Positions 17,791 to 26,008 of a stretch of DNA of 32,562 nt are shown piece after piece. Source of the stretch: Ascoidea asiatica JCM 7603 (taxonomy: Eukaryota > Fungi > Ascomycota). The translations under genes were made by a program, and so were the position numbers. The notes beneath the pieces were generated by a model. It made no database searches. It saw only the letters and a list, made by a program, of their open reading frames with translations, and was not told where the DNA came from. Position 1 is the first letter of the stretch. Every line of letters starts with the position of its first letter. The DNA lies in the NCBI GenBank assembly GCA_001600695.1, contig BCKQ01000006.1, positions 376,327 through 408,888 on the forward strand. The letters run 5' to 3'.

Positions 17791-20064
17791 TCAATTTTCA
17801 GATTCACCATCAGCATCTGAACTAGAATCAGGCTCACTTAATCCTTCATAATCAGAACTTTGAACATCCTCACCAGGAGGTATATTATAATCACTATCAT
17901 TATCAGATAATGCAACTTCATCAATCAAGTCTGAATCAAAACTTATTTCAAAGCTTTCACTATCTTCATCATCAACACTAAACCAACCATCATCAAATTC
18001 ACTTGAAGTAAAATCATTTTGTTCACTATCATTTTGTAAATCTGCTGATGAAGATTCAGAATTATAAGATTCTTCAGAATCACTTGAATCTGAAGATTCA
18101 TCTGAGCTTTCAATTGACATTATAAATCTATTTTCATTTGAAAGAACAACCATATTAAAAGGACAATAATCATTTGAAAATGATACAGTATCTCTATCAC
18201 CAATTAAAATTTCAATTTTATTACTAAATTTCATATCAAAATATATTGAATTAAAACCAACTAAAGGATTATTAGAAATATAAATTTGTTTTAAAGAATT
18301 TAAATTTTCTATATTTGAAATCCATTTAATTTTATTATCATCAAATTTTAAAATTTCTAAATTTTTTAATGAATCTAAATTTTCTATAATTGAAATATTA
18401 TTATCTGATAAATTTAAAATTTCAAGATTTAATAAATTATTTAAATTTTCAATATATGAAATTTCATTATCTTGTAAATTTAAATTTTTTAAAAATTTAA
18501 GAGATTTAAAAGAATCTTTATTAATTTCAGAAATTGCATTTATTGAAAGATTTAAATATTCTAAATTTTGAAAATTATTATTAAAAAAGGGTAATTTTTT
18601 TAAATTATTTCTTGATAAATTTAATGATTTTAAATTTTTTAATGAATTTTTAATTAAATTATTTATATTAAATTTTGTAATCATATTTGAACTTAAATCT
18701 AAATGATTTAATGAAATCATATTATTAAATGAATTATTATTAATTTCAACTAAATCATTTTTAGATAAATTTAAAACTTGAAGTTTTTTTAATTTTAAAT
18801 TTTCAATTTTAAAAATTGTATTACCTTTTAAATTTAAAATTTTTAAATTTTTTAAATTTGATAAATTATTTATGAATTTAATTTTATTAAAAGAAAGATT
18901 TAAGAATTTTAAATTATTATTTAAAATTGGAATTGATTTAATTTTATTAAAAGCTAAAGATAAATGTTTTAAATTATTATTAATATTATTAATATTATTA
19001 ATATTTTGAATATTTGAATGATTTAATTTTAAAATTTTTAAATTTTTAAAATTTTCTAAATTTTCAATTTTTTTAATATTTGAATTTATAGAAATATTTA
19101 AAATTGAAATATTTTTAAATTGATTTAAATTTTCAATTTTTTGAATATAATTTGATTTTAAAGATAATTCTTTTAAAGAAGGTAATAAATAATTTTGATA
19201 ATTTAATTCATTTATACAATTTTTTGATAATAATAAATCTTTTAAATTATTTAAACCTGAGAAATTTGGAATTGAGATTAATTTATTTTTTGATAAATTT
19301 AAATATTTTAAATTTTTAAGATTATTTAAATTTTCAGGAAATTTTATTAAATTATTTTTTAAATTTAAATGATTTAAAGAAATTGGTAATGAAATTGGAA
19401 TAAAATTAATTAAATTATATGAATAATCTAAAGTTTTTAATAAATTTGATAATGGAATTAAATTATTTGGAAATTGGAAAATTTCATTAACATTTGAATT
19501 TCTAATAATTAATTGAAATTTTATAGAATTATGAATTGAATTAAAATTTAAAATTAAACAATTTATAGTTATTAAAATATTATTAAAATTTGAATAATTA
19601 TTTTTAAAATTTTTATAATCAATTTCTAAGAATAAATTTAATTTAATTTTAATTTTATTATTTAAATAATTTTTAAATTTATAATAATTTTTTAAAAAAA
19701 AATTTATATCATTAAAATCTATAATTAAAATATTAATAATTTTTGAAAATTTTAAAATTTGATTAAAATAAGTATCAGTATTAAATATTTTATTTAAAAG
19801 AAATTCATTAATTTCAAAACAATAATTTCCATAATTAAAAAGTTCTAAAGCATTTGTTTTATTTGGAGATAATTCATCATCTTTATCTTGTTGATTGAAT
19901 ATAACTAATCTTTTAAATAATCTTTTTCTTGAAAGATCAACTAAAATAGATGAATTTGATAAAGATAATCTCCATAAAGTTAATCGATTATAAGATAATA
20001 AAAGGAAAATTTGATCTAAAATATGATTTGGTAAAAGTTCTAAGAATTTAAGATCAATTGTCAT
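17791..20064 (-). CDS. Leucine-rich-repeat protein (SDS22-like repeats) with an F-box-like N-terminus and acidic tail, 757 aa
   Basis: Roughly 17-18 LxxLxLxxNxIxxIxNL repeats; N-terminal LELLPNHILDQIFLLLS; Asp/Glu/Ser-rich last ~105 aa. Confidence 0.85.
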   Translation of the reverse strand: MTIDLKFLELLPNHILDQIFLLLSYNRLTLWRLSLSNSSILVDLSRKRLFKRLVIFNQQDKDDELSPNKTNALELFNYGNYCFEINEFLLNKIFNTDTYFNQILKFSKIINILIIDFNDINFFLKNYYKFKNYLNNKIKIKLNLFLEIDYKNFKNNYSNFNNILITINCLILNFNSIHNSIKFQLIIRNSNVNEIFQFPNNLIPLSNLLKTLDYSYNLINFIPISLPISLNHLNLKNNLIKFPENLNNLKNLKYLNLSKNKLISIPNFSGLNNLKDLLLSKNCINELNYQNYLLPSLKELSLKSNYIQKIENLNQFKNISILNISINSNIKKIENLENFKNLKILKLNHSNIQNINNINNINNNLKHLSLAFNKIKSIPILNNNLKFLNLSFNKIKFINNLSNLKNLKILNLKGNTIFKIENLKLKKLQVLNLSKNDLVEINNNSFNNMISLNHLDLSSNMITKFNINNLIKNSLKNLKSLNLSRNNLKKLPFFNNNFQNLEYLNLSINAISEINKDSFKSLKFLKNLNLQDNEISYIENLNNLLNLEILNLSDNNISIIENLDSLKNLEILKFDDNKIKWISNIENLNSLKQIYISNNPLVGFNSIYFDMKFSNKIEILIGDRDTVSFSNDYCPFNMVVLSNENRFIMSIESSDESSDSSDSEESYNSESSSADLQNDSEQNDFTSSEFDDGWFSVDDEDSESFEISFDSDLIDEVALSDNDSDYNIPPGEDVQSSDYEGLSEPDSSSDADGESEN

Positions 20065-20799: not shown

Positions 20800-22476
20800 T
20801 CAATTATTTTCAACTACAGACTGAGATTGATTTTGATTTATATCTTTATTGGAGTTAAGTTCAATTTGAGAATTGGTTTGAGATTGAGAATTGGATTGAG
20901 AATTGGATTGAGAATCAGAATCACTTTTTGATTGAGATTGTTTTAGAGTTGCACGTTCTAATTGTCTTGATCTATCAAAATATAAATTTGGATGACTTAT
21001 AATACTTTCTTCAAAAGTTTTTGAAATTAAATTTAATTGATCTTTATGAGTAATTTCAAAAATTTTGGTAATAGCTAAGATAAATTCATTTTTTGAACAA
21101 TGATCTAAAATTGAATTTAAATCATTTTTATCAATAATATTATATTCTTTTTTTAAAAATTCAATAATTGAATCATTTGATAAATCTCTTAAAATCATTC
21201 CATGATATTCACCTTTTTGTGGTCTTGGTTTTGATAAAATAATTTTATAATCCCATGGTTTATAATTAATTCTACTACCTTCTAAACCATAAGTATGTCT
21301 AATATTATATTTATAATTTTTATTAAAAGTTTCTATAGTCATTGAATTATTTGAAGTAAATGAATTTTGAAAAAATTTTATAGATTCTTCACATGATAAT
21401 CCAATACCTTTTAAAAATAAAAATAATTGTTGTCTTCCAGTATATTTTAAATGATGATTTTTAATTAAATTTATCATTAAATATTTCATTTCTGGTGGAA
21501 AATGTTTAATAATTTCATTTGAACAAACATTTTTACAATTTATTTCATTTTTATTATTATTATTTTTTAAATTATTTGAATCAAATTGATAATTTGATTC
21601 ATATTCATTTGATGAATAATTACTTGATAAATGATTTAAAATTAATAAAATTCTATCATCTTCATCTAATCTTGGTAAAATATGTAAAGTTTTAATTAAA
21701 TTTAAATTTAATTTTTTTTTAAATTCATTTGATAATATTGATAATTGTAATAATTGTGGTATATAAGCTTGACCATTTTTAATTAATATTGATCTTGTTG
21801 GTAATAAATCAATAATTTCTTCAAATGGTAATTTTATAAAATTTTCATTTTTAAAATAATTTTCAACTTGAATTGAATTAATTATTAAATCTTTATTTCT
21901 TTTAAGATAAAAATAAATTTCAGAATATGATGAATTAAATAAATCATTATATAATAAATTTTTTTCATTAATATTAACAAATTTTAAATTAAAATTTGAT
22001 AATTTAACAAAATTTAATTTTTCTTGTTTTGTTAACATATTATATCTAATTTTAAATAAAATTAATTCAGATTTTAAAAATCTTTCTCTTAATTCATTTG
22101 ATCTTGAAAATGCTAATCTTAAAATAAAATGAGAATATAAATCTTTTTTTTTATTAATATAAGAAATATTTGAAATTGAATCATTTAATGGTAATAATTT
22201 ATTTAATAAATTTTTTATAGAAATTTGAATTTGATTAATTGATTGATTTTTACTTAATAATAATTCAATCTCAATTAATAATTTTAATCTATCTAATGAC
22301 CATTGTTCAAATTCTTCTAATTTAATTTCATCTAATGGTGGATAATCATAAAATGTTAATTTTGGAAATTTATAATTTAATTCAACACTTTTATCTTTAT
22401 TTTTTAAATTTATTAATCCTAAAGTATTATCAAAATTTCTTCTACCAATTACTGTTCTTCTTGATTTTCTAAACAT
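20800..22476 (-). CDS. PRI2: DNA primase large subunit, 558 aa, with the Fe-S ligand cysteines absent
   Basis: FYDYPP..EIKLEEFE, KKDLYSHFILRLAF, DEDDR, HHLKYTGRQQL.LFLKGIGL, YNIRHTYGLEG.R.NYKPWD and ISHPNLYFDRS. Confidence 0.97.
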   Translation of the reverse strand: MFRKSRRTVIGRRNFDNTLGLINLKNKDKSVELNYKFPKLTFYDYPPLDEIKLEEFEQWSLDRLKLLIEIELLLSKNQSINQIQISIKNLLNKLLPLNDSISNISYINKKKDLYSHFILRLAFSRSNELRERFLKSELILFKIRYNMLTKQEKLNFVKLSNFNLKFVNINEKNLLYNDLFNSSYSEIYFYLKRNKDLIINSIQVENYFKNENFIKLPFEEIIDLLPTRSILIKNGQAYIPQLLQLSILSNEFKKKLNLNLIKTLHILPRLDEDDRILLILNHLSSNYSSNEYESNYQFDSNNLKNNNNKNEINCKNVCSNEIIKHFPPEMKYLMINLIKNHHLKYTGRQQLFLFLKGIGLSCEESIKFFQNSFTSNNSMTIETFNKNYKYNIRHTYGLEGSRINYKPWDYKIILSKPRPQKGEYHGMILRDLSNDSIIEFLKKEYNIIDKNDLNSILDHCSKNEFILAITKIFEITHKDQLNLISKTFEESIISHPNLYFDRSRQLERATLKQSQSKSDSDSQSNSQSNSQSQTNSQIELNSNKDINQNQSQSVVENN

Positions 22477-23608: not shown

Positions 23609-24972
23609 ATGTCATTTTCTTCAAAAATAGATCAATTTCAAAATCCAAAGAAATTATCTTGGCTTTCAGAAAGAGATAATTTAAATAAAAATAATAATAG
23701 TATTTATTCTTCAGATACAATATCAAATTTAGATTTAAATAAAGATGAATTATTACCATGTGCAGCTCAATTATCTTTTACAAAATTAAAATCAAAATCA
23801 AATTCTAATCCATTATCATCATCATCATCATCATCACCATCATCATCAATTAAAAGAAATTCAAATTATTCAATATCTTCATCTTCTGAAACTATTTCTT
23901 CAAATTCTTTAAATTCAAGACCAAATTCATTAACTTCTTCTTTTTCTTCTGTTGAATTTAATAACAGCGCTAAATATTCAAAATCTTCTCAATCTTCTCA
24001 ATCTTCTCAATCTTCTTCAAAATATCCCCCTCCAACTTTAATTGATATAAATGATAGTGATAGTGATAGTGATATTGATAATGATAATGATAATGAGGTA
24101 TTTAAAATATCTCCAAATAATATAATTCAAAGAAAAAATAATTCAAATAATATTATTAACTCAAATATAAATGAAAATAATTCATTTGATTTAAATTCAG
24201 AATTAAATTTAAATTCAAATTCCATATATTTAATATCAACAAATTCAATTAAAAATTTTTTAAATTTTTTAAATTTTAAAAAATTTTTTTCAATATTATC
24301 TTTTTTAAATATATTATTAATAAATTTTTTTAAAAAAAATAAAAATTCAAATTTTATTTCAACTAATAATAATAATAAATTACATTTACAAAGTTTCTTA
24401 ATTGGAATTTTTATTTCTTCATTAGCTTCATTTTTAAAACCATTAATTTTATATTATTTAAAATTATGGTTAAATTTATTTTTCAAAATTCTTTTTCATA
24501 TCTCAACAGTTTCTTTAATAATTTTCTTAATTTATTTATTTTTTAAATTTTATTTAATTCCTTCAAATAATAATAATAATAATAATAATAATAATCATAA
24601 TTCAAATAATAAAAATATTAATTTAAATAAAAAAATTACTTATTATGATAGTTTAATTCATTCAAAATCTGATTCAAATAATAATTTAAATATAAATTCA
24701 AATCAATTTCAAAAATTTTCTTCAATGAAAATTGATTCAATTAAAGATAATAAAACTAATAAAATTAAAAATATTTTAAAATCAAATTCATCCTCATCCA
24801 CATCCACATCCACATCTTCAAATTCAAATTCAACAAAAATCTCAAATTTAGATTATACAAAATCTGGATTTTTTGATGATAATTTAAAATCAAAATTTAT
24901 TCAACAAGTTAGAAAAAATGAACAACTTAAAAAATTAGATCAAATTAAAAATTATAAAAGTAATAATAAAAG

Positions 24973-25003
<31 letters not shown>

Positions 25004-25855
25004 ATACAAAATATAAAAGAAAAATATAATTATAAAGATAAATTAAATGATATTGATAAAGAAAAAGATAATTATAAAGATAAAGATAGAAATGAAAGAT
25101 TAACTCATCAACAAAAAGAATATTTAAAATATCAATCTATTAATCCATTAATTCAAAGATCTAATGAAATTGAAAATGAATATAATTATGAAAAAAAATC
25201 TCCAAAGTTATCTCCTAAATTATCTCCAAAAATTTCTTCAAATTCTTCATCTTCAAGACATCAATCATTAACAAATTTTAATCCAATTTCAAAAAGTAGA
25301 AGTCCATCTCCTGAATTAAGAAAAGTTAGAATTAGTTCAAAACCAACTAGGAAACAGATACCACAATCTCCTGCAAATTCTTTAGTATCAACTTCTTCTT
25401 TTAATCCCTATGAGAATAATAAAATAGTAATACAACAACAACAGCAGCATATGAGAATGCCTATACCTATAGGAAATGAATATAATAATTTCAATCAATA
25501 TAAGCAACCAAATCCAATTAATCAAATAAATCAAATAAATCAAATGACTTCAAGAAGAGAAAGATCTCCATCTCCAGTAAATGGGTATAAAAATCAACAT
25601 AATTCACCACATTCTAGTCATTCAAATCTTTCCACTCATTCAAATAATTCTCCAAAACATAAAACAATATCAAGAGATCATTATAATAGCCCGATTTTAG
25701 GTCCAAGACCATTATCATCTTTAAATAATAGAAATGACCCTTCTTTTACAACAAAAACAAGACAGATTGGCATAATGGATATAGATGCATTTAATTCAGA
25801 TGATATATTAAATCAAAGAATTAAAAATATAAATAAAAATACTTTCAATGAATTC

Positions 25856-25899
<44 letters not shown>

Positions 25900-26008
25900 T
25901 GATACTGATCAAATTTCAATTGCTCCAACAATGATGAGCCAGGAAACAAAGTTCTCAGTCCTCAATACTCGACAGAATTATAAAAACTTTGTAAGAAGAA
26001 GTAAATAA
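23609..26008 (+). CDS. Unknown Ser/Asn-rich protein with a central hydrophobic (probable membrane) region, 799 aa
   Basis: Long ORF, AAAAATGTC start context, host-like codon use; hydrophobic segments at about aa 225-315; many SP motifs in the C-terminal half. Confidence 0.8.

What the first reader, a model, noticed from the sequence alone, without database searches (positions are those of the whole stretch)
21070..21492. Primase large subunit (Pri2) has lost all four [4Fe-4S] cysteine ligands: candidate Fe-S-free eukaryotic primase
Established: the eukaryotic Pri2/p58 C-terminal domain binds a [4Fe-4S] cluster through four conserved Cys (S. cerevisiae C336, C417, C434, C474; motifs PxC, KPWDC, HGCPF, ACTK). 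Seen: the same motifs here read FPP-E329 (GAA, 21492-21490), KPWD-Y410 (TAT, 21249-21247), YHG-M427-IL (ATG, 21198-21196; the following PF has also changed) and LA-I469-TK (ATT, 21072-21070). Spacing is 81/17/42 against 81/17/40 in S. cerevisiae, so the alignment is not ambiguous. Three of the four changes need 2-3 substitutions, which argues against sequencing error. The ORF is intact and R348, K356, Y388, Y390, H394 and HPNLYF are kept. Inference: bulky residues (Y, M, I) fill the cluster cavity and give a cofactor-independent fold, reminiscent of cluster-less archaeal PriX. If this is the only PRI2, a redox-active cluster would not be universally required for eukaryotic priming. Caveat: the protein's only Cys (C314, C318, C362, C460) lie in or near this domain at non-canonical positions. 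I cannot tell whether this case is already published.
Basis: partly seen in the sequence, partly recalled or inferred. Interest (0 to 1): 0.95.

Follow-up and report, generated by a model that had tools for sequence, protein, structure and literature searches.

The report
Yeast primase lacking iron-sulfur cluster ligands
In this yeast, in every sampled relative of its order and independently in Nakaseomyces bracarensis, the essential DNA primase subunit Pri2 has replaced the cysteines that hold its supposedly universal iron-sulfur cluster with bulky residues, which offers a natural test of whether that cluster is a redox switch or only a scaffold.

Summary
Confirmed and extended. Window 20800-22476(-) is the only PRI2 in this genome, an Ascoidea yeast (closest homologue A. 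rubescens, 62%). The four [4Fe-4S] ligand positions read E329/Y410/M427/I469. Read-derived contigs show no differences. The loss is not private: seven distinct Ascoideales Pri2 proteins read E/Y/(M,L,S,C)/(I,L,V), and the cluster-shell residues P435 and T471 (S. cerevisiae numbering) also became larger. N. bracarensis lost all four independently (D/Y/L/L; shared origin rejected, p-AU 2e-75). Partial losses occur in N. glabratus, Kazachstania s.l. and H. blattae. In a broad sample of more distant proteins, 138/139 and 104/104 complete sequences keep all four. The domain remains under purifying selection, keeps the DNA/NTP-binding residues and models onto yeast p58C (Z 24). Ligand motifs of Pol2, Pol3, Rev3, Rad3, Chl1 and Dna2 are intact, and MMS19 and NAR1 are present, so the loss is Pri2-specific. 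The protein's own Cys are unconserved or match a non-ligand. Best reading: a functional cluster-free primase with side chains filling the cavity (0.82); absence of metal is inferred, not measured. No paper or earlier scan note on this was found (library incomplete).

The parts
20800..22476 (-). PRI2, DNA primase large subunit, 558 aa, single copy in the genome
20947..21549 (-). C-terminal domain (aa 310-510), p58C fold
   Evidence: model pLDDT 85.9, pTM 0.84; Z 24.3, rmsd 2.3 A over 182 aa to yeast p58C 6di2
21490..21492 (-). E329 at ligand 1 (S. cerevisiae C336); E in 7/7 Ascoideales, D in N. bracarensis
21247..21249 (-). Y410 at ligand 2 (C417); Y in 7/7 Ascoideales and in several independent Saccharomycetaceae lineages
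21196..21198 (-). M427 at ligand 3 (C434); L, S or C in other Ascoideales
21070..21072 (-). I469 at ligand 4 (C474); I, L or V in Ascoideales
21193..21195 (-). I428, replaces cluster-shell P435 (P in 123/123 four-Cys yeast Pri2; I, L or V in 7/7 Ascoideales)
21079..21081 (-). I466, replaces cluster-shell T471 (T in 121/123; I, M, V or L in 7/7 Ascoideales)
21370..21372 (-). F369, replaces W376 (W in 123/123; F in 7/7 Ascoideales)
21295..21435 (-). Conserved residues R348, K356, Y388, Y390, H394 (S. cerevisiae R355, K363, Y395, Y397, H401)
21097..21099 (-). C460 (S. cerevisiae C465, not one of the four ligands); the only CTD Cys shared by all Ascoideales sampled

Best explanation
This is the working, sole primase large subunit of an Ascoidea yeast, and its C-terminal domain no longer binds a [4Fe-4S] cluster. 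In yeast p58C the cluster sits at the seam of two helical subdomains and fixes their orientation. In the Ascoideales ancestor the ligands were replaced by Glu, Tyr and aliphatic residues, and the neighbouring shell residues grew. These side chains fill the cavity and pin the subdomains together, probably with the invariant acidic residue and Tyr forming a buried polar contact. The conserved template/NTP-binding face then does the normal job of holding the template and the primer 5' end. Primer release and hand-off to Pol alpha would therefore not need cluster redox chemistry. N. bracarensis reached the same solution separately (D/Y/L/L). SHOWN: sequence states, single copy, clade distribution, independent origin, conservation, predicted fold, other Fe-S motifs intact. 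INFERRED: absence of metal, cavity filling, the Glu-Tyr contact, enzyme activity and essentiality.
For: Single copy; PRI1 present with its Cys knuckle. Ascoideales form one clade with ligand columns removed (SH-aLRT 95; 97). Ascoideales plus N. bracarensis as one clade is rejected (delta lnL 186, p-AU 2e-75). Minimum changes per ligand site are 7/6/4/6. CTD identity to S. cerevisiae is 51-56%, against 54-59% for four-Cys yeasts at similar distance. Synonymous sites are saturated while pN is 0.08-0.19. Side-chain volume at the 4 ligand and 9 shell positions rises by 194-344 A^3 in Ascoideales and 201 in N. bracarensis, against an SD of 7 among four-Cys proteins (shell list from PMC2852410, residue volumes from my own knowledge). 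Site 3 varies among M, L, S and C and site 4 is always aliphatic, so they are not ligands. N. bracarensis has one Cys in the whole CTD. Precedent in S. cerevisiae: single C336A, C417A and C474A mutants show no growth defect, and the triple mutant is temperature-sensitive through protein instability (PMC4348247).
Against: There is no biochemical or expression evidence; no RNA run holds the gene. PMC6310810 reports that redox switching via Y397 is needed for viability in S. cerevisiae, and Klinge 2007 (cited in PMC11494364) finds the Fe-S domain essential. E329, Y410, H425 and C460 are invariant in the Ascoideales sampled and can in principle bind a metal.
Confidence: 0.82

Rival explanations
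1. Rewired metal site: the cubane is gone but a different cofactor (mononuclear Fe, Mn or Zn, or a cluster with non-Cys ligands) is held by E329, Y410, H425 and possibly C460. This could keep a structural or even a redox role.
For: E329 and Y410 are invariant in 7/7 Ascoideales, and D plus Y recur independently in N. bracarensis and P0023. H425 and C460 are kept. Asp, Ser and Tyr ligation of iron is known (own knowledge).
Against: H425 is equally conserved in four-Cys proteins (142/147) and C460 is a non-ligand in S. cerevisiae. The added volume leaves little room for a cubane. C314 and C318 are private to this protein and C362 is absent from Saccharomycopsis. Sites 3 and 4 are Leu in N. bracarensis.
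Confidence: 0.14
2. The CTD has become dispensable or is replaced in trans by an unrelated subunit (PriX-like), so the Cys loss reflects relaxed selection.
For: [quoted passage not shown]
Against: The CTD is more conserved than the NTD within Ascoideales (52-72% vs 46-60% identity to this protein). All substrate-binding residues are invariant. No other match to the family or the alignment profile exists in the genome at E up to 1.
Confidence: 0.03
3. Assembly error, pseudogene, or a paralogue beside a canonical PRI2.
For: The gene is only 17% GC; the laid contigs may be the source of the assembly.
Against: The same states occur in six other Ascoideales proteins from separate samples, with different codons. 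The frame is intact, no second copy was found, and Cys motifs survive in other AT-rich genes of this genome.
Confidence: 0.01

Closest known systems
Eukaryotic primase large subunit Pri2/p58 (PF04104), S. cerevisiae p58C (PDB 3lgb, 6di6)
   Same: Orthologue: about 52% identity, same predicted fold (Z 24.3), same substrate-binding and Y395/Y397 residues, partner Pri1 present.
   Different: None of the four cluster cysteines; shell residues P435, T471 and W376 changed. The literature treats the Fe-S domain as present in all eukaryotic Pri2 (PMC4348247).
Clusterless MutY / MutYX (PMC12631127)
   Same: A DNA enzyme whose [4Fe-4S] cofactor was thought indispensable, lost more than once independently and compensated structurally.
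   Different: Unrelated fold, a repair enzyme rather than the replicative primase. MutYX remodels helices, whereas here point substitutions occur in an unchanged frame (spacing 81/17/40-42).
Archaeal PriX (PriSLX, PDB 5of3; PMC5700102)
   Same: Cluster-free, PriL-CTD-related module that supports priming.
   Different: A separate small subunit beside a PriL that keeps its cluster; only Z 2.5 over 71 aa to this model.
Photolyase/cryptochrome C-terminal domain
   Same: Related fold (Z 5-6; PMC2852410); most members lost the Fe-S cluster kept by FeS-BCPs (PMC8476157).
   Different: Different function; ancient loss.

Membership tests
Eukaryotic Pri2/p58 orthologue | PF04104 above cut-off, full length | tested here: met
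   222 bits vs 22.4, model positions 2-266
Eukaryotic Pri2/p58 orthologue | Single-copy orthologue with Pri1 and Pol1 in the genome | tested here: met
   tree places it beside A. rubescens PRI2
Eukaryotic Pri2/p58 orthologue | p58C two-subdomain helical fold | tested here: met
   predicted model only: Z 24.3 to 6di2, TM 0.83 to 6di6
Eukaryotic Pri2/p58 orthologue | Conserved DNA/NTP-binding residues (R355, K363, Y395, Y397, H401, HPN) | tested here: met
Eukaryotic Pri2/p58 orthologue | Supports primer synthesis and viability | not testable with these tools
   needs assay or complementation; only purifying selection is shown
[4Fe-4S] p58C domain | Four Cys ligands C336/C417/C434/C474 | tested here: not met
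   E/Y/M/I
[4Fe-4S] p58C domain | A conserved alternative set of four Cys | tested here: not met
   only C460 is shared across Ascoideales; distances could not be measured
[4Fe-4S] p58C domain | Bound iron and sulfide | not testable with these tools
   needs ICP-MS, UV-vis, EPR
PriX | Separate small subunit alongside PriS and PriL | tested here: not met
   the domain is part of full-length Pri2; Z 2.5 to 5of3_C

The most novel reading that the evidence does not exclude
A whole yeast order (Ascoideales) and, independently, N. bracarensis replicate their genomes with a metal-free primase large subunit, reached by convergent acidic/Tyr/aliphatic substitutions. The cluster of eukaryotic primase would then be a replaceable scaffold, the redox-switch model could not be universal, and four substitutions might make S. 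cerevisiae primase independent of Fe-S.
Probability: 0.75. Interest if true: 0.92.

Novelty: new variant of a known kind. Interest (0 to 1): 0.86.

Why it matters
Whether the primase [4Fe-4S] cluster is a DNA charge-transport redox switch (PMC6310810) or only structural (argued from archaea in PMC5700102) has been disputed since 2017. Earlier Cys-to-Ala and Tyr mutants confound loss of redox chemistry with loss of stability. A naturally stable, cluster-free eukaryotic Pri2 removes that confound. N. bracarensis Pri2 is 67% identical to the S. cerevisiae protein and differs at the site mainly by the four ligands, so the test in baker's yeast is simple. It also allows a test of the proposal that Pri2's cluster underlies the peroxide/hydroxyurea sensitivity of Pol alpha (PMC11494364), and it gives a graded natural series (4, 3, 2, 1, 0 Cys) for how an essential cofactor is lost.

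Tried and rejected
Second PRI2: none by protein, Pfam or profile search. Sequencing error: rejected. CUG-code artefact: no CTG in this gene; the Saccharomycopsis Leu at site 3 is TTG or CTT, except S. crataegensis CTG, annotated Ser. General loss of nuclear Fe-S proteins or of CIA: rejected for the proteins examined; MMS19 and NAR1 present; CIA1, CIA2, NBP35 and CFD1 were not searched. AT-pressure: relatives with 32-45% GC genes show the same states. Sulfur sparing as the sole cause: this genome lacks ATP-sulfurylase and sulfite-reductase family matches, as reported for Saccharomycopsis (PMC6508603), but all other clusters are kept and one low-abundance protein would save little; left open. 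dN/dS could not be computed because dS is saturated. No RNA run was available. Six of the ten paper searches looked directly for a prior report (empty; 12, 92 none relevant by title or abstract); PMC5338353 was not held.

Full report
1. Observation. The ORF at 20800-22476 (minus strand) encodes 558 aa and matches PF04104. Aligned to S. cerevisiae Pri2 from the PDB, the motifs read FPP-E329, KPWD-Y410, YHG-M427 and LA-I469-TK, on C336, C417, C434 and C474. The gene has no CTG codon. Logan contigs from two studies span the gene with no differing letter; they may be the source of the assembly, so the independent check is the relatives below. No RNA run holds the gene.

2. Identity and copy number. 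The closest homologue is A. rubescens PRI2 (62%), followed by Saccharomycopsis-type proteins. The genome (20.3 Mb, 71 contigs) is therefore an Ascoidea; A. asiatica is my guess from memory of its assembly size. Three searches of the whole genome found only this locus. PRI1 and the four B-family polymerases are present.

3. Distribution. All seven distinct Ascoideales proteins have E at site 1, Y at site 2 and I, L or V at site 4. Site 3 is M here, C in A. rubescens, S (CTG) in S. crataegensis and L in four others; those four carry no species name and are assigned by the tree. With ligand and co-varying columns removed, they form one clade. A second complete loss is N. bracarensis (D/Y/L/L; two NCBI assemblies and a Logan contig). 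It lies beside the same GH76 gene as PRI2 of N. glabratus, which reads S/C/C/C. A common origin with Ascoideales is rejected (p-AU 2e-75). Partial states occur in Kazachstania s.l. (S/C/C/N in Maudiozyma, Huiozyma and Monosporozyma; C/C/C/N in Arxiozyma; D/Y/C/N and C/Y/C/N in unnamed proteins), N. dairenensis and K. africana (C/C/C/L) and H. blattae (S/F/C/S, one Cys in the CTD). The other 123 yeast proteins are C/C/C/C. Further out, 138 of 139 complete representatives and 104 of 104 complete CTDs are C/C/C/C. This covers only the best 150 of 1496 representatives, so losses in divergent protists are not excluded, and single copy was tested only in this genome.

4. Is the domain still working? 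CTD identity to S. cerevisiae is 51-56%, close to the 54-59% of four-Cys yeasts at similar distance, and within Ascoideales the CTD is better conserved than the NTD. Synonymous sites are saturated while pN is 0.08-0.19. R355, K363, Y395, Y397 and H401 equivalents are invariant. A model built only from Cys-poor sequences has pLDDT 85.9 and matches yeast p58C at Z 24.3, rmsd 2.3 A. This shows compatibility with the fold, not the cofactor state.

5. What replaces the cluster? The crystal structure places the cluster at the seam of two subdomains, in a shell of P334, L335, I420, L421, P435, F436, T471, P500 and Y503 (PMC2852410). P435 (123/123 in four-Cys yeasts) and T471 (121/123) become larger hydrophobic residues in 7/7 Ascoideales; Y503 becomes W in four; W376 becomes F in all. 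Summed side-chain volume rises by 194-344 A^3 (252 here) and by 201 in N. bracarensis. By my rough estimate this is the order of an Fe4S4 core. The repeated acidic-plus-Tyr pair suggests a specific buried contact, or else a single-metal site, which is the main rival. Relocated Cys ligands are unlikely: C314 and C318 are private, C362 is not in Saccharomycopsis, and C460 is S. cerevisiae C465, a non-ligand. I could not measure distances because model coordinates are not returned.

6. Specific to Pri2. The cluster Cys of Pol3 CysB, Pol2 CysX and Rad3 are intact by alignment to PDB chains. For Dna2 the first Cys aligns; the other three Dna2 Cys, and those of Rev3, Chl1 and Pol1, were recognised by motif. 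MMS19 and NAR1 are present. The organism therefore still makes nuclear Fe-S proteins.

7. Why it was lost is open. Options: relief from oxidative damage (pri2-C434A is synthetic lethal with sod1-delta at 30 C, PMC4348247; Pol alpha is peroxide-sensitive, PMC11494364), sulfur or iron economy (this genome lacks MET3- and MET5-family matches), or drift. Drift is plausible because three single Cys mutants are silent in S. cerevisiae and the natural series shows the ligands eroding one at a time. C434, the most sensitive ligand in mutants, is also the least often lost (4 changes against 6-7).

8. Comparison and novelty. It is a true Pri2 orthologue but fails the defining test of a [4Fe-4S] p58C domain. 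It works most like clusterless MutY (PMC12631127); PriX is a looser analogy. PMC4348247 states that all eukaryotic Pri2 proteins have the Fe-S-binding domain, and PMC6310810 concludes that yeast require redox switching. The sequences of A. rubescens, S. crataegensis and N. bracarensis are public, so a mention in an unsearched paper or supplement is possible.

9. Verdict. Real, clade-wide and convergent; new variant of a known kind; cluster-free functional primase 0.82, rewired metal site 0.14; interest 0.86. One bench step involving a pathogenic yeast was referred; it is not the decisive step.

Noticed in passing
P0150 (N. glabratus), P0011, P0075, P0176, P0164, P0129, P0033, P0098: Graded erosion of Pri2 ligands in Saccharomycetaceae: S/C/C/C, S/C/C/N, C/C/C/N, C/C/C/L, S/F/C/S. 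Two-Cys forms cannot hold a canonical cubane; H. blattae may be a third cluster-free case.
   Followed up: partly
G000 whole genome; L021:1288-2466: No ATP-sulfurylase (PF01747) or sulfite-reductase (PF01077) match; the only PAPS_reduct match looks like FAD1 by its SYNGGKDC motif (own knowledge). Sulfate assimilation appears lost in this Ascoidea, as published for Saccharomycopsis.
   Followed up: partly
L023:10001-11692: The A. rubescens PRI2 model (517 aa) omits an in-frame, stop-free Asn-rich stretch; the genomic span is 1692 bases (563 codons plus stop), so the annotated intron may be false.
   Followed up: no
L032:3001-4569: In S. crataegensis ligand site 3 is a CTG codon (annotated Ser) where relatives have TTG or CTT Leu.
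   Followed up: no
window 23609-26008 +: 799-aa low-complexity ORF with a hydrophobic segment near aa 260-315 and no Pfam match at E 0.1.
   Followed up: no
window 17791-20064 -: 757-aa leucine-rich-repeat ORF at 15% GC directly downstream of PRI2; not the neighbour in A. rubescens, where a kinase follows.
   Followed up: no
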